A stretch of 64,000 nucleotides of DNA from Mytilus edulis (taxonomy: Eukaryota), in the NCBI RefSeq assembly GCF_963676685.1, contig NC_092351.1:7874001-7938000 (forward strand). Direction: 5' to 3'. Shown piece by piece: positions 3,098 through 61,740 of the stretch; within the stretch, counting starts at the first letter, position 1; each line of letters starts with the position of its first letter. Below the pieces are notes generated by a model. It was not told the DNA's origin. It made no database searches and saw only the letters and a list, made by a program, of their open reading frames with translations. A program made the translations under genes and the position numbers.

Positions 3098-4474
3098 TTA
3101 ATCAGATGTGTTAGTCGTTAATGCAACTGTGTTAGTCTTAACTCCAACTTTGTGAGTCGTTGCTGCAGATGTGTTGGGCGTTACTACAGATGTGTTAGGC
3201 GTTACTGCAGATGTGTTAGGCGTTACTGCAGATGCGTGAGGCGTTACTGTAGATATGTTAGGCGTTACTGCAGATGTGTTAGGCATTACTGCAGATGTGT
3301 TAGGCGTTACTGCAGATATGTTAGGCATTACTGCAGATGTGTCAGGCGTTACTGCAGATGTGTTAGGCGTTACTGTAGATATGTTAGGCGTTATCGCAGA
3401 TGTGTTAGGCATTACTGCAGATATGTTAGGCGTTACTGCAGATGTGTTTGGCTTTGTATCATCTGTGTTAGTCGTTACTGCAACTGTGTTAGGTGTTACC
3501 GAATGTTCCTCTTTTACTTTAGAGACTCCGAATGATTTGAAACATGGAATCATTTCTGAAAAGTTTTTCCTAAATCTTGTACTATTGTATGCGTACAGAA
3601 AAGGATTCATGGCTGCTTTGGACCATAGAACCCAGTTAAAAATTTCATATAGATTTTCGTTGACACATTCCTCACAGAATGCTATGATGATCGTGGTAAT
3701 AGTATATGGTACCCATGTGACAAAGAACACTACGACCAATGCTGCTAAAAATCGGACAGCTTTAACTTCACGTTTAGGCTTGCTATTGTTGTGATTTGAC
3801 GTCTTGCTTGGATTAACACCGACACTATTTCTCTTTCGTATCTCTTTATAAATAAGACCGTTTACTATGACAATACAACAAAACGGAATCCCAAATTCTA
3901 TAAATGCTGTTGCAGTTGTAAATGCTTTGTCGTAGGCAAACTGTACGTCACAATCTTCTTCTTCAACAGTATTTTCTCCCGTCCAAATATCCCATCCGAT
4001 TATTGCCGGTCCATATAACAGGAATGCCAATACCCATGTGACACCGATCTGTATACAAGCCTTTTTCATTGTGACTTTCGAAGAATAATGAGGTCCGAAT
4101 TTTAGCAACAGTAATCGATCTATACTGATAACCACCATCATTAATACAGATTCTAGACATAGGGTAAAATCTATAGTCATGTAACCTTTACAGAAATGGT
4201 AACCAAAAGGCCATGTATACGTTTCCAGTGTATACACGGCGTAAAACGGCATGCTAATGGTACTCAGTAGAATGTCAGTTATCGCGAGATTTAGTAAAAA
4301 CGCGTTGTAGACAGAATGAAGTTGTTTGTCACGTATGTAGGCTAGAATTGTCAATAGGTTTCCGACAAAGCCAAAAAATACACACAACGATATAATAATA
4401 CCGAATATAACAACTAAATATAACGGAAATAAAATATCCTCTTCTTCCTCCTCTGTTTCTGTTGTATTTATCAT
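3098..4474 (-). CDS. Class A (rhodopsin-like) aminergic GPCR, histamine H3/H4 receptor-like, single coding exon
   Basis: 458-aa ORF with 7 hydrophobic segments. Motifs: GN (TM1), NLAITD (TM2), WPFG..C (ECL1), TM3 Asp (MTIDFTLC), DRL in place of DRY, TM5 Glu (TAFIEFGIP, as in H3/H4), FFVTWVPY (TM6), NPFLY (TM7). Confidence 0.93.
   Translation of the reverse strand: MINTTETEEEEEDILFPLYLVVIFGIIISLCVFFGFVGNLLTILAYIRDKQLHSVYNAFLLNLAITDILLSTISMPFYAVYTLETYTWPFGYHFCKGYMTIDFTLCLESVLMMVVISIDRLLLLKFGPHYSSKVTMKKACIQIGVTWVLAFLLYGPAIIGWDIWTGENTVEEEDCDVQFAYDKAFTTATAFIEFGIPFCCIVIVNGLIYKEIRKRNSVGVNPSKTSNHNNSKPKREVKAVRFLAALVVVFFVTWVPYTITTIIIAFCEECVNENLYEIFNWVLWSKAAMNPFLYAYNSTRFRKNFSEMIPCFKSFGVSKVKEEHSVTPNTVAVTTNTDDTKPNTSAVTPNISAVMPNTSAITPNISTVTPNTSAVTPDTSAVMPNISAVTPNTSAVMPNTSAVTPNISTVTPHASAVTPNTSAVTPNTSVVTPNTSAATTHKVGVKTNTVALTTNTSD
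3101..3499 (-). repeat. Coding 21-bp tandem repeat: 19 heptads (consensus VTPNTSA) forming the GPCR C-tail
   Basis: Plus-strand unit GGCGTTACTGCAGATGTGTTA. The heptad register holds exactly to the stop codon. Confidence 0.95.
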
Positions 4475-6189
4475 TGTGTAGAATTTATTGCACTAAAATG
4501 AGAAATTACAGGCAAATTGCATTGATCAGTCTTAATATTTACAAAGCACATGAATAATAATCGACTTTGCTTTTTGTTGATACAAAATTACGCACAACGA
4601 TATAATAATACCGAATATAACAACTAGTAAAAGATGACGTCAAATACATTGAACACAACTTTCTGCAAATTTTATAAAAGGAAGGAATAAAATCATTAGA
4701 GAAAAAGATTACACCACTATATAACACGTGTAATACGATATTTCTCAACTTTCAACATTTTAATTATTAAAAAAAAAGGTACGAGGGTGGTTTTAAACAA
4801 ACACGAAATCAAATATTTCAAAACAAAATGAATAACTGAATTTATGAATAAAAATATAAAGCTTTTCTCTCCGAACTAAATAAGATGGATAAGGTATGGA
4901 ATAGACAAATGGATTACAATAATCATAGTATGGTAGCAAATTGACATAATGCTATTTGAAGGAGAGGAGCGGTACTTTTCGTTGATTTCGGATCAATTTA
5001 TAGATACTGTCACGAGCACTTAAAATTACCATAAATAGGTGACATCGGCTCATCGTTTAAAAACTTAAGATTAATGTTCGTAAATCTGACGTTAAGGAAC
5101 ACAAACTGAAATTGACAAAATACGATTAGGGTCGGGGCACCGTATGATGAAATTTGGATCAATGTAAAGAGATTGTGACGGTAAACGATTATAAATACAT
5201 TGTGGAGGAGTCGTCGGCGCATCGTGTAGGAAAATCTTTTTGACTATTTCAGGTTTTTATCTCAACTTCAGAATTTCTATACTTTTGTGCGATTGACCAC
5301 GCAACATCACTCCCCGCTAAACAAAATTCGTGTTTACCCGAATTATCATAAAAGGAACAAAATTAACTAAATAAGTATTTCAAATGGGGTGGTAGTACGA
5401 ATATTAAAAGTAAGCTATATTTATCTAATAAAACTATACTCAAATTTAAACCAAATGTCAAAGGAAAAAAATATGCACACGTCTGATATTTTGTCAATTT
5501 TCGTCGTGATAAAGAAACGGAAAATTTGCAAAAAGATTACTCTTGAAAAAAATAGACATTATAACTTAAAAAATGTATACTAAATCTGTAAAAATTAGGG
5601 TATCAATCATAAAAACATACAAAATAAATATGATATTGTAAAAAGTTTAACAACTTTTAAATTAGTCAATATGTATGCATTATAAAGTCTATCATCTATC
5701 AAACGCTCATTAAATGATTAAATAAATAAAAACGTCATTCATAATCATCTCATCGATATTTAAGTAAGGTAACTGGTCAACTTTTCCTGAGGAAGTAGGA
5801 ACCTTGGTTTCATAGTCATTTCAAGATTTATCAACGAAGATGTGTATATACATTGTGTAAGTAACGAAACAATGACTACTGAGCTGAAATGTCATTCGAG
5901 GACTTAAAGACCAACAGCAAAGTTATCGAATATTTTCCTTGTAGGTTTTAGCGTCCAAACATAAAGCATAAAAGTTGGTATATTTTACGGTTCAAGATGA
6001 TTGTCAAATCATGTTGATATCTAAAATTTTGAATAGAAATGACAAAACAAATAGATAAGCAAAAAAATGATAAACAAATTTGATTTTTTTTAAATAGTCT
6101 CAGATAGGGGAATGGCAATGGCAATACATCATTAATCCTGAAATTGAACTAACATTCAGGCAAACGAAATTAACAAAAGTGGTATATAC

Positions 6190-6435
6190 TCATCATAGAT
6201 ACCAGGATTGAAATTTTGTGTATACGCGCGTTTCGTCTATTAAAGACTCATCAGTTTCGCTCGAATTAAAAATAATAAAAAGACTAATAGAAATTAAAGA
6301 GCATTGAGGACCAAAAACTCCGAAAAGTGTGCCAAATACAGCTAAGTTAATCTATTCCTAAGGTAGAAAAGACCTAGTATTTCAAAAATTCAAAGTTTTG
6401 TAAACAGGTAATTTTTAGTTATAACCATATCAATA
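6190..6435 (-). mobile_element. Retrozyme family A partial copy (hammerhead core intact, stem I damaged)
   Basis: Reverse complement reads CTGATGA-GTCT-TTAAT-AGAC-GAAAC-GCGC-GTA. The body matches the 51676-52711 unit. The post-cleavage stem I strand appears deleted. Confidence 0.8.
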
Positions 6436-14661: not shown

Positions 14662-14972
14662 GTCCCCGAGGGTATCACCAGCCCAGTAGCCAGTACTTCG
14701 GTACTGGCATGAAAATACAGATTTTTTGTGTTATTAAAATTTGCTGTTACAAAATGATAGAAATTATTATAAATTAAGGAATGTATCTCCCTCATGCAAA
14801 GCCCTGATTTCTTTCACAGATTGGGCTATACTTTTTGGACCTTTTGGATTATATCTCTTTATCTTTTACATAAGCTTTGGATTTCAAATATTTTGGCCAC
14901 GAGCACCACTGAAGAGACAGGTATTGTCGAAATGCGCATCTGGTGCAAGAAAATTGGTACCGTTAATTTTAT
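14662..14972 (+). ncRNA. Retrozyme family B copy with intact type I hammerhead ribozyme (14903-14946)
   Basis: GCACCA-CTGAAGA-GACA(ggtat)TGTC-GAAA-T(GCGC)A-TC^TGGTGC. Stem I is GCACCA/TGGTGC, stem II is GACA/TGTC, and a minimal stem III carries a palindromic GCGC loop. Confidence 0.88.
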
Positions 14973-22296: not shown

Positions 22297-23627
22297 TTTC
22301 TAAATTATTAACATCTATTTTATCATCAATCAATGACGGGCTTCAAAGTTATTGTGAAACTGCCCATTCTAGAGGTGGCGTGAATTAGATGTGGATTCTA
22401 AAAAAATACAAAGTTCTTATAGAGTACATACAATCTAACTCTCTTTCATCTTGTAATAGTATCAAAACATTTGACTTCTCTGCACTTTATACAAGTATTC
22501 CACATTCCAAACTAAATTGAAAGAGTTGGTATTGCTTTGATTCATAAAAAAGAATGGCCAACGAAGATACAACTATCTTGTCTTAGGAAGGTTTAAATCC
22601 TACTTTCTAAAGGATCACTCTGATTAAAACAAAAAATTCTCTGAAACCGACATTATCAAGATGCTTGATTTCTTGATTGACAACATATTAGTTACGTTCG
22701 GAGGACGTGTTTTTCAACAAGCTATCGGCATACCAATGGGAACGAATTGTGCCCCTCTTTTTGCCGACTTGTTTCTTTATTATTATGAGGCTGACTTCAT
22801 ACAGGAACTTCTTAGGAAGAAAGATAAGAAGTTAGCAATATCCTTTAACTCTACTTTCCGCTATATAGATGATGTTCTTCACTAAATAATTCAAACTTTG
22901 GTGACTATGTCGAATGCATCTATCCCATTAAACTAGAGATACAACAGATACAGTTAAGTCGGCCTCATATCTTGACTTACATCTAGAAATTGACAATGAG
23001 GGTCGATTGAAAACAAAACTTTACGACAAAAGAGATGATTTCAGCTTTCCAATTGTGAACTTTCCATTTCTAAGTAACAACATTCCAGCAGCACCTGCAT
23101 AAGGTGTATATATCTCCCAATTGATACGATATTCCTGTGCTTGCTTTTCCTATCATGATTTTCTCGATAGAGGGTTGGTGCTCACAAGGAAGCTATTAAA
23201 TCAAATGTTCCAAATGGTGAAGTTGAAATTATCTCTTCGTAAATTTTACGGACGCCATCACGAGTTGGTTGACCGTTATGGAATAACCGTTTCACAAATG
23301 ATGTCGGATATGTTTCTTCCGTCGTAACAACAATCCCCTTCCCTTTTATGAATCTGACCTACCGAATTAGACTATTTACCGGATTTGCTATAACATAAGA
23401 AACACGACAGGTGCCACATGTGGAGCAGGATCTGCTTACCCTTCTGGAGCACTTGCGATCACCCCTAGTTTTTGGTGGGGTTCGTGTTGTTTATTCTTTA
23501 GTTTTCTATGTTGTGTCACGTGTACTATTGTTTGTCTCTTTGTCCTTTTCATTTTTAACCATGGCGTTGTCAGTTTATTTTCGATTTATGAGTTTGACTG
23601 TCCCTCTGGTATCTTTCGTCCCTCTTT
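22297..23627 (+). mobile_element. Naiad-like PLE family 1, 5'-truncated RT plus structured 3' tail
   Basis: KTFDFS.LYT.IPH, GIPMGTNCAPL.ADLFL, FRYIDD, KLYDKRDDFSF and KFYGRHH then a stop at ~23327, with no C-terminal endonuclease. Confidence 0.9.
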
Positions 23628-27089: not shown

Positions 27090-27625
27090 TAGTTATCAAA
27101 GGTATCAGAATTATAATTTAATACACCAGACACGCATTCGTCTACACAAGACTCATCAGAGACAATCAAATCAAAATAGTTATAAAGTCAAGCAAGTACA
27201 AAGTTGAAGAGCATTGAGGACCAAAAATTCCAAAAAAGTTGTCCCAAATACGGCTAAGGTAATCAATCTGTTGTAATCGAAGATTTATAGAAATGACCAT
27301 ATAATTTATATTCATGTCATCACCGAAGTGCGGACTACTGGGCTGGTGATACCCTCGAGGACGAAACGTCCACCAGCAGTGGTATCAACCTAGTGGTGTA
27401 AATAGTTATCAAAGGTACCAGGATTATAATTTAATACGCCAGACGCGCGTTTCGTCTACATACGACTCATCAGTGACGCTCAGATTAAAATAATTATAAA
27501 GCCAAACAAGTACAACGTTGAAGAGCATTGATGACCCAAAATTCCAAAAAAAGGTTGTGCCAAATACGGCTAAGGTAATCAATCTGTGTCTGGGATCAGA
27601 AAATCTTAGTTTTTCGAAATGTTCA
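27090..27625 (-). ncRNA. Retrozyme family A tandem copy (two hammerheads; 27436-27480 intact) in the lectin intron, sense orientation
   Basis: Reverse complement of 27436-27480 reads AGCGTCA-CTGATGA-GTC(gtatgta)GAC-GAAAC-GCGC-GTC^TGGCGT. A second degenerate copy is at ~27125-27165. Confidence 0.88.
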
Positions 27626-28073
27626 ACCAAAGGTCACCAGCAAGCACGAAAGACAAGAAACACAATTTTACCATGGCACAACAAAATACTTTACAATTTG
27701 CATCGGACCTCGCAATTTGATTAGCTAGCATGATTTTGGTTAATGCATATCAACAAAGCTTTTCAACGGCATAAGTCTGTAAGAGACGAGATTAAAAAAA
27801 ATCATCAGATTCCTTGAAATGTATTTTGTATTTATTCATGGTTCATATATCACATCAAAATGTAAAATGTTCGTGTGTGCATGTAAAGTTAATTTCGTTG
27901 CTGAGTTCTTTCATTATACTATGTTGCTTTGTATCTTTTTAAAGATGACTATTACAATTAACCTTATAGAGATCAATGTTATTGTTTCCTTAAATAATAG
28001 AAAAAAATTCAAGTAAATTTCAAACCTGATTTATGAAGCTGGTATAAAACATTCTAAATATATCTTCTTTTAC

Positions 28074-45164: not shown

Positions 45165-46852
45165 AGATGACCTCCGAAGACTGCCGACGGTCAGATAATA
45201 TGATAAAAACATAAATATAGATATGAATAGATAGCGACCTCGTGCAATAGGTCTGTTTGATTTCAAATTGTAGGTTAAAAATATATGTTTATCATAAGAA
45301 TGAGTATTTGTGGATTGCATCAGTCAATCAAATGGTTTACCCTTCAATGTCGACATTTTTTACTTTTAATAACTGTAAATGCCTAATTTATACATAATCC
45401 GTCGCTAGCTAAGGGCTTAAATTGAAGTCACATCAAACTGATTCAAGGAGATCGAACTTTTTTAAGAAAAAATTGAATCAAACTGGTTGCGATTTTTTTT
45501 TATTTTATCACTAAAAATCATATATTTTTATATATATCTTAGCTATTGTCCCTTTAAAAAGGAAAATTAGCCTGGTGTCTTGGATGAGGTTTTTCGTATA
45601 TGAAGACAAGACATTAACCCAATTAAATGTATCTACATGTATTAAAACAAGGATTACTTCATATCGGTGTAAACTTGTAACTGGACGTGATAAGTTGTTA
45701 TCCGGCATAAGTAACCTAGCATTATTCTATTAACGGTTATAATCTGCCTTGGATAAAACATGTTATTTCAATTATGAACCAATGAGACTGATACTTACAC
45801 CTACAGATGTAGAAGGAAGATAAGTGTCTATCATATTAAGCATTAAACAACCACCCACTGATCAGTTTAAACACATATGGTATGTGGTAATCGCGATTCT
45901 TCGAATTTTCAAAAAAACATGATTTTTTTTTAAAGATGACTTGGATTTTGAAGATTATTTTGATATTCTTGGAGATATAGACATTTCAAAATAATGCAGA
46001 TTTATGTTTTTGTTATCTCTATATGCTTTATCTATATCATCGATACGACATGTTTACTTTGTCATTTGTATGTAATGCTATTAAATGTGACTTTATGTTT
46101 CAAATGTATCTGTGTGTTAATGTTCAAATAAAATCTCTGAAATCCAGAAACAAGATATTGTTATACATTCTGAGATTAGAATTTCTATTGAAACTATAAT
46201 ATCAAGTTTATGAAATGGAAAATAATCAATTCGTTCTTAAAGATCAGTTCTAATGTATAGAGTACAATGTATATTCTGAACAATTTGAAACATCCGTTAT
46301 AATTAGCATCTGCAATTAATGGTGAAATACATATCACGCGTTTATCTGATATGCCATAATAACAAAGAGAAAATCATGTTAAATCGGCATTGGTCGTCTT
46401 ATATACTTTATCCTCTAAACTCAATTAACAAAAGTACAGAGACAGAAAACACAATAATTCAATATGCAATGCTTTATATGATACATGGAGTACATAAATA
46501 CATATATACAAGAGGAAAAAGAAAAAAAGAATACACTAAAAAAAAAAGATAAGTCTCCAGATATTCGATATCTATAAAAATTACAAGATAAAAAAAAGGT
46601 ACATAATGAAAAAATAATTAACTAGGGGGACTCACTTATTTCACAATTTTTTTAACTTTGAAATCCTTTTTGTATTAAACAGTGAAATTTATCGATATTT
46701 AGTCTCATGTAATAACAAGAAGGAAGGACATTTTTCTTTTCGATTTTTAAAGCAGGGCATATCATGTACTCATTTAGATTTTATGGCATGAAATTCTCCT
46801 ATTTAACAACAGATTGACAATAAATTGATGAAAATCCGACCTGCCCTGTCTG
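45165..46852 (+). repeat. Segmental duplication block A (paralog 53810-54125 plus 57815-58990)
   Basis: Long colinear identity, e.g. TTAACGGTTATAATCTGCCTTGGATAAAACATG at ~45730 and ~57837. Confidence 0.9.
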
Positions 46853-47240
46853 TAATTTTGATATTTTGTACAAGAAAAGATGAGCAGAACGTGTCCGGAA
46901 ACTTTTTCAACGGTATTTTTCTCAATACAGGCTGTGGTTTTTTTTATTAACAGTACGGCTGGATATTATGTAACATGTAACGTTTGTAAACGACAATTTG
47001 TAAACGAGTTCTTGTTTTTACATATTTAAAATTTAATGATCTTTTTCTTTTTCAGTTTTTGCTTTAATTAAAACAATAATCATTGCTTTTAAATAGTCCG
47101 AGAAAAATTCACCACGTTTACAAATAACTAAATATCTATGAAACTCGTCATGGTTTGGGTTTTGTGAGAGATTGACCAAATTACATCATGATTTTTTAAA
47201 GTCTACAAGTTGCCAAATTCTTCTTGAAAACTTATATTGA

Positions 47241-48637
47241 AAGGGAAGGGCATTAGCTGTCAAAACGATGTTCATAGCTGTAAAATCGATGTTCATAGCT
47301 GTCAAATCGATGTTCATAGCTGTCAAATCGATGTTGATCGATTTGATAAGAGTTTTCATGTTTAAATTATAAGATGCGTAAACGTATATCCAAAAAAACA
47401 AAACATAAAAGACATACAATAAACAAAGCATGGACTGGATATTATTATCAGCATTACGTATGTATTTGAGACGAGATCTATACTGATTAGCCTCGGTAGA
47501 CTGCCGATGGATCATATAACCCGATAAAAGATAAAGAGATAGCGAGGACGTGCTTTCAGATCTGTTTGATTTTATACTATGAGTGGGAAAAGTGGCAATC
47601 ATTGTTTTTACCTGTATAAGAAGGATATTTTGTAGATCGAATCACTCTGCGACCAAATGGTTCACCCTGGTTTCACTCACAATGTTGACATTATTTTAGT
47701 CAATTATTTATTTTATTGTTAGTAGCAGCATGCTAACGCCCTGTTCATGCGTAAAAGAGGGACGAAAGATGCCAGATGTCAAACTCATAGATAGAAAATA
47801 AACTGACAACGCCATGGCTTAAAATAAAAAGTCAAACAGACAAATAATAGTACAGAAGACAAAACATAGACAAAGCAACACGAACCCCATATGATCACAG
47901 GTGCTCCGGAAAGGTAAGCAGATCCTGTAAACCATTTATAGGTTAGTGGTTGAATTAAAGGTCACAGTGATACGGATTCAATAAGGTTAAATTATTTACT
48001 TGGATGCAGTTTTTGAGCTTATTTTGACAAAGTTTTGCCAAACTGACATGACTGCTTTTTCATTTTGTTTTTTATTTTATTAAATCTATAGAAATGCATG
48101 AAAATGATTGCACACGAAAGCTGATACACATCATCAAGCCCATGCATTGTTCTTTGTCAAGTGATTAAACAATCATGTCAATTTTTGATATTATGCTTAC
48201 TTGCGTTTATTTTAAACAACCACAATGTAAATATTGAAAGTTGACATTAAGCATTGCTTAAAACATCTTGTTTACTTATTGTTTGCTTATTTGTGGAGAA
48301 TGAGTAACATTACAAAAATACTGAACTCCGTGGAAAATTCAAAACGGAGAGTCCCTAATTAAATGTCAAATTCAAAAGCTCAATCCCCGAGGGTATCACC
48401 AGCCCAGTAGTCAGCACTTCTGTGTTGACTTGAGATATCATTGATATGTTCATAATAATAAATTAACTGTTACCAAAATTTTTGAAATACTAAGGTTTTT
48501 CAACCTCAGGAAAAGATTACCTAAGCTGTATTTGGCAAAACGTTTAGGAATTTTTGGTCCTAAATGCTCTTCAACTTCGTACTTTTTTGGGCCTATTAAA
48601 CATTTTTTTTTATTCAAGCGTAACTGATGAGTCTTGG
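47241..48637 (+). repeat. Segmental duplication block B (paralog 60337-61677), including a Naiad tail relic and a retrozyme A fragment
   Basis: Colinear from AGGGAAGGGCATTAGCTGTC to GCGTAACTGATGAGTCTT. Confidence 0.9.
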
Positions 48638-49424
48638 ACTATACAAGATATGCACGATTTTCAGTAGACCCTTCCAAATAATTATATCAATCTTCAGATA
48701 TCAACTGACCACTAATTCTTATAAATTTCACAAAGTACATGCTGTTAGTTCAGAAATTTTTGTGAGGTTTTATTAATGTGAATAATGTGTCCAGTCGAGT
48801 ATTGTAGTAATAAAAACTTGCATTCTTATATAATAGGCAGATTTTACTGAAATCACAAAAACTAATCTCACAACATCCATTTTACAAAAATCACAATAAA
48901 AAATGCATGCAATAATGTCTAATGTCCTCGACTGGTACCCGACCATTATTGACAAGCTTGACAATTTGTATTTTCCAAAGGCATATTTTACAGAGGGAAC
49001 CGACCTATCAATGTCCATGAGATGCCTTATGGTAATCAAATTTTGCATCTGTCCAATGTTTTGTATGCATGGTTTATAAGATAACTATTCAAAAACAGAT
49101 CATGGAAACCAACAATGGTGAATCCAAAAAATTAAAATGGGATTTTCGAGAAATATTCATATCAAGTTCTATAAAACATCTAAGTTATCGGTGAATTAGA
49201 TTGCTGGAAAAACAAATCTGACCAATGTGTTGTTGTACAAGAAGACTAACATGGTTGACCAAACACATTGCTAGTTAAAACAGGTGAAATAAACGTCACA
49301 TGTCATTGAACTAAGTGTGTAACTGTTTGAGGCTGAATATTTACTTTATTGAAATGCATTCCTTATAACATATGACCATTGATATGTTTATTGGTAAGTA
49401 GACTTAATCCTTGATTATCTTTTT

Positions 49425-50512
49425 TTAACATGACAAATGTTTCCATGTTATAGGCAACACCATGGGTGCCACTTAAAGCATGATCTCTAACATACTCTCT
49501 GTAGCATAAGTTTTCATGTTATAGGCCACACCATGGGTGCCACTTAAAGCATGATCTCTAACATACTCTCTGTAGCATAAGTTTTCATGTTATAGGCCAC
49601 ACCATGGGTGCCACTTAAAGCATGATCTCTAACATACTCTCTGTAGCATAAGTTTTCATGTTATAGGCCACACCATGGGTGCCACTTAAAGCATGATCTC
49701 TAACATACTCTCTGTAGCATAAGTTTTCATGTTATAGGCCACACCATGGGTGCCACTTAAAGCATGATCTCTAACATACTCTCTGTAGCATAAGTTTTCA
49801 TGTTATAGGCCACACCATGGGTGCCACTTAAAGCATGATCTCTAACATACTCTCTGTAGCATATGTTTTCATTGTTTATGTTTTGGTTTGTCTTGTTAGA
49901 TAATTAAGATTGTTGTGAAATGTTGTGCACTATTTATTGTCTGTCATTACTATTTTTTTCAATTCATTGTTCTATTTATGATATTTTAAATTGTCTGCTT
50001 GTTCTCATTTTCACCTCATTTTCCTTAATAACTTTTCAGAACATTCGATTGTTTCTTATAATAACCTGGGTAAATGAAGTAAAATAATACAATGTAATAC
50101 TGTAGATATATGATTTGTATTGGTATCCTTTGTTTAAAAGTAGAGTGTATACATAACAATAGTGCAGATAAACAAATTGTTCCTACTAACTCTAAAATGT
50201 TTTTTCTATACCTATAACAAATAAAATGCTATGTTTTTTTTCTAAAATTTTGTCCACCAGTTTGTTGGTTACATAAAAATACAATCAATATCCAGTTTAC
50301 AATTTATTTTTAGCATTTAGGTATTTAAATCTTTCCAATATAGGATATCTTTAAAAAGAAAATGCTTTATACTTCACACATCATTAAATTCCAAATCTTA
50401 GTATTGTTATGAGAAAAAACAATTAGATCTTGGGAATATATGATGATAGAAAGCTCAATATATTGTTTGCTGTCAATAAATTTGTGTTACAGCTTTGAGG
50501 CATTATCACTGT
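49425..50512 (+). repeat. Segmental duplication block C (paralog 58991-60293)
   Basis: Colinear from TTAACATGACAAATGTTTCC to GGCATTATCACTGTG. The paralog has ~180 bp extra at ~59790-59950. Confidence 0.9.
49444..49872. repeat. 71-bp minisatellite, 6 near-perfect units
   Basis: Unit CATGTTATAGGCCACACCATGGGTGCCACTTAAAGCATGATCTCTAACATACTCTCTGTAGCATAAGTTTT. Only one unit is present in the paralog. Confidence 0.95.
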
Positions 50513-51675
50513 GTCTAAACCACACCGGCAAAATTTGTTCGGACTCGATGGTATCTATCATCCGGCACAATGACGGAACATTAACAGACAGAAGAAAGCT
50601 AGGTTTCTCCTTATTTTCTTAATTTTTTTTATGATATCGAAGAATATATATACATATACAACTATTTTCTATTGTGATATGCAATATTTTCTACAACCGT
50701 TCTATATTAACGGAGAAATAAGTAAAAATACACGTCAAAAGGACGAATTGAGTGAACCTTGCCTCGAAATTGTTTAATTTCTCTTTAAATTGTTCACATT
50801 GTACGGAAAGAAAGGTACGAGAAGATAGATACTGACACGGAGATTGCAAAACTTGTTTTTATGAACATCTCAATACTTGTAATTCTGAGTATGGAACGAA
50901 AGAAATGGGTCATGTCAAATAAAATTACACCGGTTTCGTCATTGTTGTTTACTACACAATCACCCGATGCGTAAAACAGAAGCAGCATGAAATGATACAT
51001 CCTTTATTTGACAGGTTCAATAAAGTTGTTTTTACTAGGCATGTGACATAAAGATAAGAACATAAGGGCAAAAATATGTATTTTGAATTTTGAAGGTTGA
51101 TTTGATCATATCATCAGAAAAAGAGTGCACAATTTCTTCTTTCAATTAACAATCATGACATGCATGACTTGGCAATCAATAGTCTTAAAAGTCCATATAG
51201 TTACACTTTATCCTGTAATAAAATTATTTGTTTTACTAATTAGCTAATTTGTGATATCAGAAACATGTCATTGCATTTCTTACAGTACTTTCATGTACTT
51301 GACCAAATAACGAAAAAACCAGAAACACAAACCTTCTGTATTTATATAGAATATATCAATAATTGATTTATTTCTGGTTTTTTTCATTATATATTTTTTT
51401 TAATTATTTTTTTATTTAATTCAATTCAATTTTATTTCAAATCTAAATTTTAATTTTAATTAAATAATTTTAATTTATTATATTTTAAATTTTAATTATT
51501 TAATTTTAATTTATTCTAATTCATTCTATTCTATATAATTATTTGTTTTACTTTGTATTTTTCTTTTATTTCTCTTTTAGATCTAACGCCTAAAGGTTCC
51601 GTGTGTTAACATGTACTACAGTGACAAACATTTGAGAGTTTTCTAGTTATAATGTGAAGTCAGAAACATGTTATT

Positions 51676-52711
51676 GTTTCGTCCCCGAGGGTATCACCAG
51701 CCCAGTAGTTAACACTTCGGTGTTGACATGAATATCAATAATGTGGTCATTTTTATAAATTTCCTGTTTACAAAACTTTGAATTTTTCGTAAAACTAAGG
51801 ATTTTCTTATCCAAGGCATAGATTACCTTAGCCGTATTTGGCACAACTTTTTGGAATTTTGAATCCTTAATGCTCTTCAACTTTGTATTTGTTTGCATTT
51901 ATAAATATTTTGATATGAGCGTCACTGATGAGTCTTACGTAGACGAAACACGCGTCTGGCGCACTTTATTATAATCCTGGTACTTTTGATAACTATTTAC
52001 ACCACTGGGTCGATGCCACTGCTGGTGGACGTTTCGTCCCCGAGGGTATCACCAGCCCAATAGTTAACACTTCGGTGTTGATATGAATATCAATAATGTG
52101 GTCATTTTTTTTTAAATTTCCTGTTTACAAAACTTTGAATTTTTCGTAAAACTAAGGATTTTCTTATCCCAGGCATAGGTTACCTTAGCCGTATTTGGCA
52201 CAACTTTTTGGAATTTTGGATCCTTAATGCTCTTCAACTTTGTACTTGTTTGTCTTTATAAATAATTTGATATGAGCGTCACTGATAAGTCTTATGTAGA
52301 CGAAACGCGCGTCTGGCGTACTAAATTATAATCCTGGTACTTTTGATAACTATTTACACCACTGGGTCGATGCCACTGCTGATGAACGTTTCGTCCCCGA
52401 GGGTATCACCAGCCCAGTAGTTAACACTTCGGTGTTGACATGAATATCAATAATGTGGTCATTTTTATAAATTTCCTGTTTACAAAACTTTAATTTTTTT
52501 CGTAAAACTAAGGATTTTCTTATCCCAGGCATAGATTACCTTAGCCGAATTTGGCACAACCTTTTTGGAATTTTGGATCCTTAATGCTCTTCAACTTTGT
52601 ACTTGTTTGGCTTTATAAATATTTTTAAATGAGCGTCACTGATGAGTCTTGTGTAGACGAAACGCGCGTCTGGCGTACTAAATTATAATCCTGGTACTTT
52701 TGATAACTATT
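51676..52711 (+). ncRNA. Retrozyme family A: tandem array of ~355-nt units with three type I hammerhead ribozymes
   Basis: Unit periods 355 and 357 nt. Cores at 51925, 52282 (CTGATAA variant) and 52639 read GCGTCA-CTGATGA-GTCT(n5)AGAC-GAAAC-GCGC-GTC^TGGCG. Predicted cleavage after 51956, 52313 and 52670. Confidence 0.93.
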
Positions 52712-53132
52712 ATTACATCATCCTGTAAGTACTTGGACCACCAGGTCAGGAAAACTTCAAAAACTCTATAGTTTTGTATATTAACATGTACGACAGGTGG
52801 AAAATTTGACAGTTTTCTAATAGATAGTAATAATATGATGTCATAAACATGTTATTACCTCATCTTGTAGAAACCCTAAAACAAAAAAACCCATAGTAAT
52901 ATACTTAATACTTACGTATCTGGGATTCAGAAACAAGCGCATGTGCATTTACAAATATGTCTCCTCTTTAGATATAAGAATAAGTGGTATGAGTTCCAAT
53001 GAGACAACTCTCCATTCCAGTCACAATATGTAAAAGTTAACAATTATAGATTAAAGTACGGTCTTCAACATGGAGCTTTTGCTCACATCGAACAGCAAGC
53101 TACAAAAGGCCCCAAAAATTACTAGTGTAATA

Positions 53133-53311
53133 AAAATTAACGGTACAAATTTTCTTTCACCAGATGCGCATTTCGACAATACATGTCTCTCTGGTGATGC
53201 TAGTGACCAAAATATTTGAAATCCAAAGCTTATATAAAAGATGAAGAGCTATAACCCAAAAGGTCCAAAAAGTATAGTCAAATCCGTGAAAGGAATCAGA
53301 GCTATGCATGA
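53133..53311 (-). mobile_element. Retrozyme family B partial copy (core mutated) nested in a SINE-like repeat
   Basis: Reverse complement of 14792-14970. The core reads CCAGAGA instead of CTGAAGA. Confidence 0.8.
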
Positions 53312-54779: not shown

Positions 54780-57508
54780 TGAATTATGATCACTATTTCA
54801 AACAAATCACTATTTCAAACAACTAAGGATCACTAAACAACAAGAATTTAGTACTAGACACCATCTTTCTAATTACTGTCATTATATTGACAATAATGTT
54901 ATTCCCAGTGGCTTATGTATTAAAGCACTGCCTCAAACTACCGGCAACCTGTATGATACATTTCTACGTAGGTGGGATCAAACCCTATTTCACTGTTCCC
55001 TCCGTCTACTCATACTCCTTAGAGAACACTGTATTGAACATCTAAAAAACTTAACACTTCAATTTTACTCCTTGTCTCACGCTTGCAAAAAAGATCTAAC
55101 AGCAAGCGAATTCGAGAACATCCAAGAGCGCCTGAGAGATATAACCAACACTAAGACCGCCACTCTCCGCTCCAGACAAAGATGCAAATTTCAACGGGAT
55201 GGTACTTCTTTCCCATCCATTAGTACAAAAGAAAAAAAATAATAAAGCCAAAAATAGACATTTCAGACGTAGACCTCAAGTCCTCAGCAACAAGATCAAT
55301 ACCGTTGTTAATCTCTCCAGCAAACAACTTACTGAGGACGAAACTTCATAACTGCCTAGAGCCTTAAACTTTTGTCCAGTCCCAGGTCCAGTGAATCATA
55401 CTAAATTGTCTGATGAACTGGATAATTTTGCCAGGAGCCTCCGCATCAAGGAACATTTTGCATCGAAAGAGGACGATAGCACCACCTCAGATAGTGACTC
55501 TGACGACTCCAACGAGTATAGATTTAGAAAGAAAAGTAACTGGGTCCCTAAACCAAGTAAAAACACCACCTTAGAATCATTTATAGACAATGTTAAAACG
55601 GATATACTTACAAATGTAAAAATAAAAAATCAGACCTATGACAATTTAACACCTGGTGAACGTGTGGCTTTAACAAATTTGAGAGATAATGACGACATTG
55701 TTATTAAACCTGCAGACAAAGGGAGTGCAGTTGTCGTCATGGACAAATCTAACTATATGTCCAAGTGGCCATTCGCCAATTAGATGATGACCGGTTTAAC
55801 AAAAAACTTAATTCGGACCCCACCCTCCAATTCAGCCAGGAAATAACAGAATTTTTAAAGGAAATGTTTGACAATGACATCATTGATATAGATACTCTCA
55901 AATATTTAAAACCTGAAGATTTTAAACCTGGGCGATTCTACCTGCTCCCTAAAATTCATAAACTTTGTAACCCAGGAAGACCAATCGTCTCAGCTAATGG
56001 TCATCCCACCGAAAAGATATCCGAATTCGTTGATTACTATCTTCGACCACATGTAGAAAACTTGCCATCTTTTATAAAAGATTCTACAGATTACCTACTA
56101 AAAATGCTGGATTTAAACCCTCTACCTGCCAATACTACTCTTGTCACAATGGATGTCACCTCCCTCTATACGAATATTCCCCATGCGGATGGTATTGAAG
56201 CATGTAGAGAAGTTTGAAACGCTCGATCTCTTAAAATTCCACCGACTGATTGCTTAGTAGAAATGCTTTCTATGGTTTTGAAAAAGAACAACTTCACATT
56301 CCAAGGTGAACACTATTTACAGACAAATGGCACTGCTATGGGTACAAAAATGGCTCCATCTTATGCCAATATATTCATGGGTAAAGTTGAAAAGCAACTA
56401 CTGGAGTGCTCCATCGAAAAATCGCTTTCCTGGTATCGATTCATTGATGACGTTGACATGACATGGGACAAGGGAGACCAAGAATTACAAACTTTTATAA
56501 CATATGCTAACAATCAACACCCTACCATCAAATTCACCCATGAAACATCTAATTCCACCATAAACTTCCTTGATTCATCTAGCACCCTCTCTGTAGGTAT
56601 TATTATCACAGATATATACTCTAAACCTACAGATACTCATCAATACTTGTCGCCTGAAAGTTGCCATCATCCACACTGCACGAAGAGCATTTCATACAGC
56701 CAAGCTCTCAGAATAAGGCGAATCTGCTCCTCTGAAGACACTGCAAAACAACGTATGGGGCAGCTCAAAGGACATTTGAAAAGAAGGGGATATAAACACA
56801 AAGACTTCAAAAATAGTTTTCTAAAAGCGGAATCCATCCCCAGAAGCAGTCTGCTAACTTACAAAGAAAAACAGAAAAGTAAAAGAATTCCATGTGTGCT
56901 CACTTACCATCCATGCCTGAGAAATAGTTTCAAGACCATTCTTGATCATTGGACAGCAATCGATAAAACATTCTAAGTTATCCAAAATCTTTCCTGAGCC
57001 TCCCATGATTGCCTTCAAACAACCTAACAGCCTGAGAAATATACTTATCCGTGCTGACCTTTCCAAACCTAATCATACTGTAGGTAATTGCCAGCCTTGT
57101 GGGGATAAGCGCTGCAAATGTTGCAACCAATTGCAGCATTCATCAACATTTCACAGTAAGACCACAGAAAAGACATACAAGATCTTCTGCAATGTCAACT
57201 GCAAAAGCTCAAACGTGATTTACGTTCTTGAGTGTCCTAGATGTGGTCTCCAATGTGTTGGTGTATCTATGGAGCCATTTCACAAACGCCTTAATGGCCA
57301 CAGGAGTGACATCACAACAAAACAGTATATACCTGTCAGCCAACACTTCAGGTTACTAGATCACAATCTGAAAGATTTTGATCACATGAAGATCCTTGTG
57401 ATCGAACAGGATTGTACATGGCAAAATAAGCAAAGAGAGAATCGGGAGAAGTTTTGGATAAAAACACTTGGTGTCCTACATCCATATGGAATCAATAGAA
57501 AGAAATAA
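54780..57508 (+). pseudogene. Disrupted PLE polyprotein: RT plus Cys-rich linker plus GIY-YIG endonuclease
   Basis: Motifs [76 protein letters not shown]...CVG, R.NGH, HF and REKFWI..L....P.GIN. Frameshifts and a TGA at 56215. Confidence 0.92.
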
Positions 57509-59019
57509 TTAAATTTACAGTCTAGTGTTTATATTATGATATTCAGGATTTTGGATTAAAATCAATCGACCAAAACTCACCTGTATTATTACTGATCTAT
57601 GTTTACACCTTATACATTATATATCAGTATTGTTAAAACTTTTGACACAGAAGAAGGCCATTTGTTGAGCCGAACAATTTGCAATTATTGTATAATTTAT
57701 ATCATCTGTTCAGTTTTTTCGATCTTTGTGCGATGATATTCAACACTTTTTAGGGTTTTGTTTCCCATCTATTTATCGGTATTGTTACACAATCTTTTAG
57801 ACTCATATAAATATATAGCATAGTTTCATTATTCAATTAACGGTTATAATCTGCCTTGGATAAAACATGTTATTTCAATTCTAAACCAATGCAGACTGAT
57901 ACTTACACCTACAGATGTAGAATGAAGATAAGTGTCTACCATATTAAGCTTTAAACAACCGCCCACTGATCAGTTTAGATAAATATGGTATGCGATAATC
58001 GGGAATCTCCGAAATATATAAAATACATGAAATGTTTTTAAAGATGATTTGGATTTTGATAATTATTTTTATATTCTGGGAGATATAGAGATTTCAAAAT
58101 TTTAAGATTCATGTTGTTTGTTATCTCTACATGCTTTATCTATATTATTGATACAACATGTTTATTTTGTCATTTGTATATAATGCTATCAAATGTGACC
58201 TTATGTTTCAAATGTATCTGTGTGTTAATGTTCAAATAAAATCTCTGAAACCAATCCAGAAACAAGATATTGTTATAAATTCTGAGATTAGAATTTCCGT
58301 TGAAACTATAATATCAAGTTTATGAAATGGAAAATAATCAATTCGTTCTTAAAGATCAGTTCAAATGTATAGAGTACAATGTATATTGTGAACAATTTGA
58401 AACATCCGTTATATCATCTGCAATTAATGGTGAAATACATATCACACGTTTATCTGATATGCCATAATAACAAAGAGAAAATCATTGTTAAATCGGCATT
58501 GGTCGTCTTATATACTTTATCCTCTAAACTCAATTAACAAAGGTACAGAGACAGAAAAACACAATAATTCAATATGCAATGCTTTATATGATACATGGAG
58601 TACATATTATACATATGTACAAAAGACAAAAGAAAAAAAATAAACTAAAAAAAAGTTAAATCTCCAGATATTCGATATCTATAAAAATTACAAGATAAAA
58701 AAAGGTACATAATGAAAAATTAAGTAACTAGGGGGACTTACTTTTGATTTTTTTTTCACAATTTTTTTAACTTTGAAATCCTTTTTGTATTAAACAGTGA
58801 AATTTATCAATTTTTAGTCTCATGTAATAACATGAAGGAAGGACATTTTTCTTTTCAATTTTTATAGCAGGGTATATATATCATGTACTCATTTAGTTTT
58901 TATAGCATGAAATTCTCCTATTCAACAAAAATTCTCCTATTTAACAACATATTGACAATAAATTAATGAAAAGCCGATCTACCCTGTCTGTTAACATGAC
59001 AAATGTTTCCATGTTATAG

Positions 59020-59415
59020 TTAATAGTTATCAAAAGTACCAGGATTATAATTTCATACGCCAGACGCGCGTTTCGTCTACATAAGACTCATCAGTGACGC
59101 TCACATCAAAATAGTTAAAAAGCCAAATAAATACAAAGTTGAAGAGCATTGAGGATCCAAAATTCCAAAAAGTTGTGCCAAATACGGCTAAGGTAATCTA
59201 CTCCTGGGGTAAGAAAATCCTTAGTTTTTCGAAAAATTCAAAGTTTTGTAAACAGGAAATTTATAAAATGACCATATAATTGATATTCATGTCAACACCG
59301 AAGTGCTGACTACTGGGCTGGTGATACCCTCGGGGACGAAACGTCCACCAGCAGTGGCATCGACCCAGTGGTGTAAATAGTTATCAAAAGTACCAGGATT
59401 ATAATTTCATACGCC
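59020..59415 (-). ncRNA. Retrozyme family A young insertion: one full unit plus a 40-nt terminal redundancy, intact hammerhead at 59056-59101
   Basis: AATAGTTATCAAAAGTACCAGGATTATAATTTCATACGCCA occurs at both ends. The insert is absent from the paralogous site at ~49453. Confidence 0.92.
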
Positions 59416-61419
59416 ACACCATGGGTGCCACTTAAAGCATTATCTCTAACATACTCTCTGTAGCATAAGTTTTCATTGTTTATGTTTTGGTTTGTCTTGT
59501 TCGATTGTTGTGAAATGTTGTGCACTATTTATTGTCTGTTATTACTATTTTTGCAATTCATTGTTCTATTTATGATTTTTTAAATTGTCTGCTTGTTTTC
59601 ATTTTCACCTCATTTTCCTTAATAACTTTTCTAAACTCATACAGTGGCCTTCCAAGGAACTTTCAATTGTTGCTTATAATAACCTGGGTAAATGAAGTAA
59701 AATAATACAATGTAATACTGTAGATATGATTTGTATTGGTATCCTTTGTTTAAAAGTAGAGAGTATACATAACAATAGTGCAGATAAAAAAAGGAAAATG
59801 TCACACATATAGATGTTTTTCAAATACATTGAAAAGACATGTTATTTTTTTTCCATGTATTATTTTGTTTGTCATTTATATCATAATCTCCAGTTTGTAG
59901 GCTATTCATAATTAACATTGACATATCTCAATACTTCATAACAGTTTGACAAACAAAATTGTTCCTACTAACTCTAAAATGTTTTTTCTATACCTATAAC
60001 AAATAAAATGCTATGTTTTTTTCTAAAATTTTGTCCACCAGTTTGTTGGTTACATAAAAATACAATCAATATCCAGTTTACAATTTAATTTTAGCATTTA
60101 GGTATTTAAATCTTTCCAATATAGGATATCTTTAAAAAGAAAATGTTTTATACTTCACACATCATTAAGTTCCAAATCTTAGTATTGTTATGAGAAAAAA
60201 CATTTGATCTTAGGAATATATGATGATATAAAACTCAATATATTGTTTGCTGTCAATAAATTTGTGTTACAGCTTTGAGGCATTATCACTGTGACTGGGG
60301 TATAGAAATATGGTCACTTGGTCTTCTCCCGACCGGCAGGGAAGGGCATTAGCTGTCAAATCGATGTTTATAGCTGTCAAATCGATGTTCATCGATTTGA
60401 TTAGAATTTTCATGTTTAAATTATAAGATACTTAAACGTATATCCAAAAAAACAAAACGTAAAAGACATACAATACACAAAGCATGGACTGAATATTATT
60501 ATCAGCATTTCGTATGTATTTAATCTATACTGATTAGCCTCCGCAGACTGCCAATGGATCATATAACCCGATAAAAGATAAAGAGATAGCGAGGAGGTGC
60601 TTTAACGGTCTGTTTGATTTTATACTATGAGTGGAAAAAGTGGCAATCATTGTTTTTACCTGTATAAGAAGGATATTTTGTAGATCGAATCACTCTGCAA
60701 CCAAATGGTTCACCCTGGTTTCACTCACAATGTTGACATTATTTTCCTGTTAGTAGCAGCATGATTACGCCCTGTTCATGTGTAAAAGAGGGACGAAAGA
60801 TGCCAGAGGGACTGTCAAACTCATAGACAGAAAATAAACTGACAACGCCATGGCTTAAAATAAAAAGTCAAACAGACAAATAATAGTACAGAAGACAAAA
60901 CATAGACAAAGCAACATGAACCCCATATGATCTCAGGTGCTCCGAAAAGGTAAGCAGATCCTGTAAACCATTTATAGGTTAGTGGTTGAATTAAAGGTCA
61001 CATGAATACGGATTCAATAAGGTTAAATTATTTACTTGGATGCAGTTTTTGAGCTTATTTTGACAAAGTTTTGCCAAACTGACATGACTGTTTTTTCATT
61101 TTGTGGTTTATTTTATCAAATCTATAGAATTGCATGAACATTATTGCACAGGAAATGCTGATACATATTATCAAGCCCATGCATTGTTCCTTGTCAAGTG
61201 ATTAAACAATCATGTCAATTTTTGATATATGCTTACCTGCGTTTATTTTAAACAACCACAATGTAAATATTGAAAGTTGACATTAAGCATTGCTTAAAAC
61301 ATCTTGTTTACTTATTGTTTGCTTATATGTGGAGAATGAGTAACATTGCATAAATACTGAACTCCGAGGAAAATTCAAAACGGAGAGTCCCTAATTAAAT
61401 GTCAAAATCAAAAGCTCAA

Positions 61420-61740
61420 TCCCCGAGGGTATCACCAGCCCAGTATTCAGCACTTCTGTGTTGACTTTAGTTATCATTGATATGTTCATAATAATAAATT
61501 AACTGTTACCAAAACTTTGAATTTTTGAAATACTAAGGCTTTTCAACATCAGGAATAGATTACCTTAGCTGTATTTGGCAAAACGTTTAGGAATTTTTGG
61601 TCCTAAATGCTCTTCAACTTCGTACTTTATTTGGCCTATTAAACATTTTTTTTTATTCAAGCGTAACTGATGAGTCTTTTGTAGATGAAACACGAGTATA
61701 GCGTACATATACAATTTTAATCCTGGTATCTATAATGAGT
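61420..61740 (+). mobile_element. Retrozyme family A decayed copy (paralog of 48384-48637)
   Basis: Starts TCCCCGAGGGTATCACC. Hammerhead-like CTGATGAGTCT..AGATGAAAC at ~61667-61692. Confidence 0.8.

What the first reader, a model, noticed from the sequence alone, without database searches (positions are those of the whole stretch)
59020..59415. Filled versus empty site shows a retrozyme insertion beginning exactly at the self-cleavage site
Seen: the paralogous empty site reads GTTATAG-GCCA-CACC (49.45-49.53 kb). Here 396 bp are inserted. On the minus strand the insert starts TGGCGTATG, the first nucleotides after GTC^, sharing a TGGC microhomology with the target. It runs one full unit through an intact hammerhead and ends ~40 nt past the next cleavage site, with no clear TSD. 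Inference: cDNA synthesis began ~40 nt 3' of a cleavage junction, crossed an uncleaved or ligated junction, and stopped at a ribozyme-generated 5' end. This is a genomic footprint of RNA-mediated mobilisation from a multimeric or circular template.
Basis: partly seen in the sequence, partly recalled or inferred. Interest (0 to 1): 0.8.

Follow-up and report, generated by a model that had tools for sequence, protein, structure and literature searches.

The report
Ordinary 5'-truncated mussel retrozyme copy
The 393-bp insert is a real, young copy of a mussel hammerhead "retrozyme", but its start at the ribozyme cut site is what ordinary 5' truncation gives by chance, and its end 41 nt past the cut site is where every copy of this family ends.

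Summary
Observation confirmed. Window 59020-59412 is a clean insertion into a duplicated host segment. The paralogue is uninterrupted at 49453|49454, with no target duplication or deletion. The insert is a minus-sense 354-nt retrozyme unit with one intact type I hammerhead, followed by 41 more nt. Its 5' edge meets the predicted cleavage site, but is ambiguous over TGGC (6/7 if GT-TGGC is counted).

Interpretation partly supported. About 85 other copies and 276 genome-wide pattern hits end at the same point, +41, just before a conserved hairpin. Their 5' ends are scattered, and 47% of copies are shorter than 150 nt. This matches the published Penelope-like mode: internal start of reverse transcription on unprocessed multimeric RNA, without ribozyme cleavage (PMC11167929).

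Genome-wide, 5' ends are not enriched at +1. Counts for -4..+5 were 4,15,7,6,10,2,6,9,11, with local peaks at -3, +6 and +13. The spread across -3..+1 is the opposite of that expected from ribozyme-made ends. About 58 filtered copies look like this one. RNA reads cross the cleavage junction without a pile-up of ends.

Earlier follow-ups of this scan, on other DNA of this genome, had already noted that copies end just before the hairpin. Verdict: ordinary, low interest.

The parts
59020..59412 (-). Strict retrozyme insertion (393 bp) relative to the empty paralogous site
   Evidence: Flanks are contiguous in the paralogue at 49453|49454; sequence
59413..59416 (-). TGGC shared by target and element (5' junction microhomology). 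It equals positions +1..+4 after the cleavage site
   Evidence: The empty site reads GTTATAG|GCCACACC. The element reads GTC|TGGCG. The homology extends imperfectly to GT-TGGC (6/7)
59063..59416 (-). One full 354-nt unit, from cleavage site to cleavage site
   Evidence: 97-100% identical over 1-354 to many genomic copies, and 100% to C12:73941903-73942256
59022..59062 (-). Second copy of +1..+41, the canonical 3' terminal segment of the family, ending ...GATAACTATT
   Evidence: Same 3' end in about 85 loci and in 276 filtered genome-wide termini
59020..59021 (-). Two extra nt (AA) between +41 and the target
   Evidence: Sequence. The unit continues TA at +42/+43
59057..59100 (-). Type I hammerhead ribozyme, the only complete one in this copy. 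Predicted cleavage is between 59063 and 59062
   Evidence: Rfam RF00163, 33.0 bits, E 2.2e-6, full model 1-45
59309..59372 (-). GC-rich hairpin module that begins just 3' of the +41 end; probable RT start or binding signal
   Evidence: Fold -29.3 kcal/mol, z -2.5. All copies end just before it
49425..49517 (+). Paralogous empty site (junction 49453|49454) in the first unit of a 71-bp tandem array
   Evidence: BLAST of the flanks; TRF
51676..52711 (+). Sister insertion of the same family, 2.9 units, 5' end at unit position 75, 3' end at +41
27090..27626 (-). Sister insertion, 1.5 units, 5' end at unit position 176, 3' end at +39
   Evidence: Rfam 35.8 bits

Best explanation
This is a recent, dead-on-arrival copy of an abundant mussel non-LTR retrozyme. 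The family has a 354-nt unit and about 14,000 tail motifs in the genome.

Proposed mechanism. A Penelope-like reverse transcriptase primes on nicked target DNA. It starts copying at a fixed internal point of the RNA, +41 after the hammerhead cut site, immediately 5' of a conserved hairpin. The RNA continues beyond that point, so it must be a multimer or a circle. The enzyme ran back across one uncleaved or ligated cleavage junction and through one unit, then fell off. The cDNA end was joined to the target through a short homology (TGGC, or GT-TGGC). The fall-off point happens to lie at or next to the cleavage site.

Shown: the insertion itself, its exact borders, the family-wide fixed 3' end, the scattered 5' ends, the lack of a +1 peak, and junction-crossing RNA.

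Inferred: which enzyme did it, whether the template was circular or a linear multimer, and pausing of the RT at the folded hammerhead as the cause of the local peaks at +6 and -3.
For: 1. Filled versus empty site is exact.

2. Every terminal copy examined ends at +39..+42. Of the first 100 of 276 filtered termini, about 60% end at +41, about 30% at +42 (a chance T), and about 10% at +39/+40.

3. In an unbiased sample of 56 insertions, anchored on the 3' tail along the first 36 Mb of contig C1, 5' ends are scattered. 47% are shorter than 150 nt, and some are only 28-50 nt.

4. Fine-scale genome-wide counts of 5' ends show no peak at +1.
-, positions -4..+5: 4,15,7,6,10,2,6,9,11.
-, same positions: 6,7,1-2,3,5,5,4,1,5.
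- 0-1 of about 38 junctions.

5. 58 filtered copies genome-wide start like this one, and this copy is among them as a positive control.

6. Units within an array are 98.6% alike, against 94.7% between arrays. The two 41-mers of this copy share a minority G at +9. Both fit a homogeneous multimeric or circular template.

7. RNA-seq run X22 shows strong expression of the hammerhead-sense strand. 177 reads continue across the cleavage junction, and there is no pile-up of ends at 59062/59063.

8. Literature.
- PLE RT starts internally beside an AC-rich stem-loop. HHR cleavage is not needed, unprocessed multicopy RNA is the template, and no RNA ends lie at the HHR site (PMC11167929).
- PLE insertions are heavily 5'-truncated partial tandems with a 30-40 bp tail (PMC8557442).
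- Mussel retrozymes have 350-390-nt units, are mostly circular RNA, and PLEs are the suspected mobilisers (PMC7229834).
Against: - The 5' edge does coincide with the predicted cleavage site, and a cleaved template would give exactly this.
- Positions -3..+1 together hold somewhat more 5' ends than their neighbours (38 of 84), so something near the junction does favour stops.
- No autonomous element sharing the tail or the hairpin was identified here.
- There is no TSD, whereas several sister copies have 7-25-bp duplications.
- The junction classes were assigned by eye from listed sequences, with some ambiguous cases.
Confidence: 0.8

Rival explanations
1. The template was a partly processed RNA whose 5' end had been made by hammerhead self-cleavage. 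The cDNA ran off that end, so the insert begins exactly at +1.
For: The border coincides with GTC^TGGCG. Some other copies also begin at +1: about 10 of 84 junctions, and 58 filtered hits. Linear cleaved retrozyme RNA exists in mussels at 5-25% (PMC7229834).
Against: - +1 is not enriched over its neighbours (P 0.22 and 0.38).
- The local peak is at -3, upstream of the cut.
- The observed shares at +1:-1:-2:-3 of 10:6:7:15 contradict the expected 84:11:5:1.
- The junction is ambiguous over -3..+5 because of the GT-TGGC homology.
- No RNA ends pile up at the cleavage site.
- HHR cleavage is dispensable for PLE insertion in vitro (PMC11167929).
Confidence: 0.12
2. A DNA-level event: capture of an extrachromosomal or broken retrozyme DNA fragment by end joining, or ectopic conversion from another array. 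No reverse transcription at this site.
For: There is no TSD, and there is microhomology at one junction. Both also fit end joining.
Against: The 3' end is the exact family-wide +41 end shared by hundreds of independent insertions. Random DNA fragments would not reproduce it. The orientation-specific fixed-3'/variable-5' pattern is the signature of target-primed reverse transcription.
Confidence: 0.04
3. Assembly artefact: a repeat collapsed or chimerically joined into the 71-bp host repeat.
For: Both the insert and its flanks are repeats. Only the left junction is bridged by an independent-looking contig, and that run may be the assembly's own sample.
Against: The left junction contig has 0 differences over 125 nt. 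The borders are base-exact relative to the paralogue. The 3' end is canonical.
Confidence: 0.03

Closest known systems
Metazoan non-LTR retrozymes of mussels (Cervera & de la Pena 2020, PMC7229834)
   Same: Type I hammerhead with a weak helix III. Unit of about 350-390 nt (354-357 here). Tandem arrays. Thousands of copies. Abundant RNA that is continuous across the cleavage site. No LTR/PBS/PPT.
   Different: No difference of kind was seen. Sequence identity to the published clones could not be checked, because no sequence is held here. That paper does not describe the fixed 3' end at +41 or the 5'-truncation spectrum measured here.
Penelope-like element insertion mode: internal initiation of reverse transcription, the 'tail', pLTR partial tandems (Frangieh 2024, PMC11167929; Craig 2021, PMC8557442)
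   Same: Fixed 3' end a few tens of nt downstream of a hammerhead cut site and next to an AC-rich stem-loop. Heavy 5' truncation. Partial tandems. An occasional inverted head-to-head copy. Ribozyme cleavage leaves no mark on the ends.
   Different: This element encodes no protein. The autonomous partner and any shared sequence with it were not identified here. The distance from cut site to RT start is 41 nt, against roughly 85-92 nt in the Anolis element.
SINE/LINE-type 5'-truncated retrocopies joined by microhomology
   Same: Fixed 3' end, random 5' end, and a few bases of microhomology at the 5' junction.
   Different: No poly(A) or simple-repeat tail. Multimeric copies. The start is internal to the RNA, not at its 3' end.
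Plant LTR retrozymes (PMC4918200)
   Same: Hammerhead-bearing non-autonomous retroelement expressed as circular RNA.
   Different: Plant elements have LTRs, PBS, PPT, type III hammerheads and 4-bp TSDs. None of these is present here.

Membership tests
Metazoan non-LTR retrozyme | Type I hammerhead ribozyme with a conserved catalytic core in every unit | tested here: met
   RF00163 at 33.0 bits, E 2e-6, full-length match. Sister copies score 25.9-35.8 bits. This is 1 bit under Rfam's gathering score.
Metazoan non-LTR retrozyme | Short (170-400 nt) units in head-to-tail arrays, dispersed in many copies | tested here: met
   354-357-nt units in arrays of up to 5.5 units. 14,382 tail motifs genome-wide.
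Metazoan non-LTR retrozyme | No LTR, PBS or PPT; TSDs absent or longer than 4 bp | tested here: met
   The insert consists of unit sequence only. There is no TSD here. Sister copies have none, or 7-25 bp.
Metazoan non-LTR retrozyme | Expressed as self-cleaved, circularised RNA | tested here: inconclusive
   Strong sense-strand RNA, with 177 reads across the unit junction. These fit circles or linear multimers equally. No gel or RNase R data.
Penelope-like (PLE) mobilised non-autonomous element | Fixed 3' end set by internal RT initiation next to a stem-loop | tested here: met
   3' end at +41 in about 85 loci and 276 filtered termini. The hairpin starts right after it.
Penelope-like (PLE) mobilised non-autonomous element | Heavy 5' truncation, partial tandems, occasional inverted copies | tested here: met
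   (47% of copies under 150 nt). Arrays. One head-to-head palindromic junction at C12:68370364.
Penelope-like (PLE) mobilised non-autonomous element | Sequence shared with an autonomous PLE of the same genome (3' end or leader) | not tested
   Earlier scan notes claim a shared Naiad leader hairpin. My exact-motif search found only retrozyme variants. The RT/GIY-YIG relic at 55.4-57.5 kb shows no canonical hammerhead.
   +1 equals the local mean; the peaks are at -3, +6 and +13.

The most novel reading that the evidence does not exclude
The modest cluster of 5' ends at -3..+1 (and at +6) may mark a physical feature of the template at the cleavage or ligation junction. One possibility is a residual modification or the tightly folded hammerhead of a circular RNA stalling the reverse transcriptase. 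Another is a minority of cleaved linear templates. On this reading, genomic copies such as this one would carry a readable trace of the RNA's processing state.
Probability: 0.1. Interest if true: 0.45.

Novelty: new member of a known kind. Interest (0 to 1): 0.2.

Why it matters
As proposed, the finding would have been the first genomic footprint showing that ribozyme self-cleavage shapes retrozyme copies. The genome-wide test says it does not.

What remains is useful but confirmatory. A protein-less hammerhead retrozyme family shows the same insertion signature as Penelope-like elements: a precise internal RT start beside a stem-loop, heavy 5' truncation, and no mark of hammerhead cleavage. 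This supports the published view that animal retrozymes are non-autonomous passengers of PLEs, and that the template is an unprocessed multimer or a circle.

Tried and rejected
1. A full histogram from fetched loci was not possible. I replaced it with IUPAC 'not-consensus' pattern searches whose listings show the junctions.

2. Presence/absence polymorphism could not be judged. The only contig that skips the insert (run X6) has just 29 nt on the left. That is exactly the stretch shared with the paralogue, so it proves nothing.

3. The autonomous partner was not found. ORFs at 55.4-57.5 kb are an RT (weak RVT_1 match, below Pfam's cut-off) plus a GIY-YIG-like relic without a canonical hammerhead. 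No other element class shares the exact hairpin motif. The Naiad link in earlier notes was not tested.

4. The whole 354-nt unit does not fold better than shuffles (z -0.8). Only the hairpin does.

5. I considered that the 41-nt overhang is the PLE 'tail'. It is simply the constant 3' terminal segment of the family.

Full report
WHAT IS THERE

On the + strand, the host sequence ...CATGTTATAG (ending at 59019) is followed by 393 bp and then GCCACACCATGG (from 59413). The two flanks are contiguous in a paralogous segment. 58991-59019 equals 49425-49453 at 100%. 59413-59476 matches 49454-49517 at 96.9%, and the next repeat units at 98.4%. The wider paralogy is 58000-58991 with 45892-46853 (88.8%) and 59413-60296 with 49809-50516. 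The host is a 71-bp tandem repeat, 6.1 copies at 49439-49872.

The filled-versus-empty comparison is therefore sound. The insert is 59020-59412, with no target duplication and no deletion. GCCA (TGGC on the minus strand) could belong to either partner.

Read on the minus strand, the insert has three pieces:
- one 354-nt unit running from TGGCGTATG... to ...CTGATGAGTCTTATGTAGACGAAACGCGCGTC;
- 41 further nt, TGGCG...GATAACTATT;
- two extra A.

Rfam places a full-length type I hammerhead at 59057-59100 (33.0 bits, E 2e-6, one bit under the gathering score), with cleavage after GTC.

The 5' border is therefore ambiguous from -3 to +5, not fixed at +1.

THE FAMILY

The genome is 1.37 Gb with 14 very large contigs. 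It holds 14,382 matches to a 25-nt tail motif.

In the window and in 90 fetched loci, every terminal copy ends at the same place, +39 to +42 after the cleavage site (...GATAACTATT). The 5' ends differ from copy to copy. Of 276 filtered 3' termini genome-wide, the first 100 end at +41 in about 60%, at +42 in about 30% (as expected from a chance T), and at +39/+40 in about 10%. So the 'about 40 nt past the next cleavage site' is not a property of this copy. It is the constant 3' end of the element.

Directly 3' of +41 in the unit lies an AC-rich start of a GC-rich hairpin (59372-59309, -29.3 kcal/mol, z -2.5).

I drew an unbiased sample of 56 independent insertions, anchored on exact tail motifs in genome order along the first 36 Mb of contig C1. 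In it, 47% are shorter than 150 nt, some are only 28-50 nt, and others reach 1.6 kb.

Units within an array are 98.6% alike, against 94.7% between arrays. The two 41-mers of this copy are identical, including a minority G at +9. A copy on C12 is 100% identical over 354+43 nt but starts at unit position 321. The insertion is therefore young and has siblings with other 5' ends.

TEST OF THE KEY CLAIM

In the unbiased sample, 2 of 56 insertions start within -3..+5. The uniform expectation is 1.3 (P 0.36).

For fine scale I searched the whole genome with patterns that require non-consensus bases upstream, a free gap, and a consensus anchor downstream. I then classified the listed junctions by eye.
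- Anchor +6..+27, first 100 of 363 hits: 84 true junctions. At -4,-3,-2,-1,+1,+2,+3,+4,+5 they number 4,15,7,6,10,2,6,9,11, and 14 at the +6 boundary.
- A longer anchor gave 6,7,1-2,3,5,5,4,1,5 for the same positions.
- Two wider zones gave 0-1 of about 38 and 1 of about 19 at +1.

+1 does not exceed its neighbours (P 0.22 and 0.38). The local maxima are at -3, +6 and +13.

Suppose ends were ribozyme-made and flanks random. The apparent positions +1:-1:-2:-3 should then be 84:11:5:1. They are 10:6:7:15. Copies that begin at -3 or -4 contain the GTC upstream of the cut, so they cannot come from a cleaved 5' end.

A filter that keeps this copy as a positive control finds 58 copies genome-wide with an apparent +1 start. 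Such copies are expected members of a broad distribution. Given the -3 hot spot and the GT-TGGC homology, this copy may equally belong to the -3 class.

RNA AND ASSEMBLY

In raw RNA reads of run X22, the hammerhead-sense strand is strongly covered. 177 reads continue across the unit junction. The only listed pile-up of ends, at 59416, is where the stretch stops matching: 84 of those 96 reads run on into hammerhead sequence. There is no pile-up at the internal cleavage site 59062/59063.

A contig of X1 bridges the left junction without any difference, but X1 may be the assembly's own sample. The one contig that skips the insert (X6) has only the 29 nt shared with the paralogue on its left. It says nothing about polymorphism.

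MECHANISM

Shown: an exact insertion, a fixed 3' end, scattered 5' ends, and no trace of cleavage in the ends.

Inferred: a Penelope-like reverse transcriptase binds the hairpin region and starts at +41 on RNA that extends beyond that point. It copies back through +1 and across an unbroken junction, and usually falls off early. The cDNA end is joined by short homology.

Because the start is internal, a cleaved linear monomer could only give a 41-nt copy beginning at +1. The lack of a +1 spike argues that circles or uncleaved multimers are the usual templates. The peaks at +6 (the outer end of helix I) and -3 (helix III) fit pausing at the folded hammerhead, but this is conjecture.

All of this mirrors published work.
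- The Anolis PLE starts reverse transcription internally beside an AC-rich stem-loop. It does not need hammerhead cleavage and uses unprocessed multicopy RNA, and no RNA-seq reads end at the cut site (PMC11167929).
- PLE insertions are heavily 5'-truncated partial tandems (PMC8557442).
- Mussel retrozymes have 350-390-nt units, are mostly circular RNA, and PLEs are suspected as mobilisers (PMC7229834; preprint 10.64898/2026.07.22.740005).

This genomic copy carries only one complete hammerhead, so its own transcripts could not release a monomer.

COMPARISON AND NOVELTY

This is a further copy of a known kind of element, inserted in the known PLE manner. The measured details (exact +41 end, hairpin next to it, no +1 peak) extend the PLE picture to a protein-less retrozyme. 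Two earlier follow-ups of this scan, on other DNA of the same genome, had already noted that copies end just before the hairpin. I confirmed that part independently. Their Naiad attribution was not tested.

LIMITS

- Junction classes were assigned by eye, and ambiguous cases (internal deletions, single mismatches) were set aside.
- Pattern filters sample 7-50% of junctions and only near-consensus copies.
- The partner element and the species were not established with tools.

Noticed in passing
window 55391-57508 (+): Frameshifted Penelope-like ORF relic: an RT (weak RVT_1 match, 25.9 bits, below Pfam's 29.6 cut-off) followed by a C-terminal cysteine-rich, GIY-YIG-like region. It lies 1.5 kb from the finding and 2.7 kb from the 51.7-52.7 kb retrozyme array. 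Rfam found no canonical hammerhead in its 3' region.
   Followed up: partly
window 14662-14972 (+); 53140-53200 (-); L026:373-765: A second hammerhead family with core CUGAAGAG and a tail TGGTGCAAGAAAATTGGTACCGTTAATTTTATT that resembles the family A tail (TGGYG..AAAATT..GGTAC..TTGAT). It starts at the second half of the same GC-rich module (GTCCCCGAGGGTATCACCAG). A third family, at 6182-6430 (-) and 61420-61740 (+), does the same.
   Followed up: partly
genome-wide listings: Local hot spots of 5' ends at -3 (xGTC|TGGCG), +6 (the outer end of hammerhead helix I) and +13 (inside the palindrome AATTATAATT). This may reflect RT pausing or snap-back. One head-to-head palindromic junction, CCAGGATTATAATCCTGG, lies at G000:C12:68370364.
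   Followed up: partly
genome-wide listings: Recurrent read-through variants with deletions inside the hammerhead (GAAACGTC, TAGACGTC, GTAGAC|TGGCG). These are copies whose ribozyme is destroyed by slippage in the (CG)n tract. They could serve as a natural control for ribozyme-independent mobilisation.
   Followed up: no
window 45892-50516 versus 58000-60500: Segmental duplication (88-97% identity). The 46-50 kb copy carries an extra 2.6 kb (46854-49424, including a retrozyme-like fragment at 48384-48635) and 6 units of the 71-bp repeat. The 58-60 kb copy has one unit plus the retrozyme.
   Followed up: partly
window 51608-51675 and 52712-52860: The 2.9-unit array also sits in a repeated host sequence that supplies an empty site (...AAACATGTTAT|TAC...), with at most a 2-bp duplication. 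This is a second filled/empty pair with a non-cleavage-site 5' end (unit position 75).
   Followed up: partly
window 3098-4474 (-): Intact 458-aa rhodopsin-family GPCR ORF (7tm_1, E 5e-55).
   Followed up: no
L053/L054, L067/L068, L070/L071 (contig C1): Pairs of retrozyme copies with identical flanks a few kb apart, direct or inverted. These are local segmental duplications carrying the insert, so raw copy counts overstate the number of insertion events.
   Followed up: no
window 23480-23580; L019, L036 flanks: Another dispersed repeat (…GGTTCGTGTTGTT…CCATGGCGTTGTCAGTTT…) repeatedly serves as a target of retrozyme insertions.
   Followed up: no
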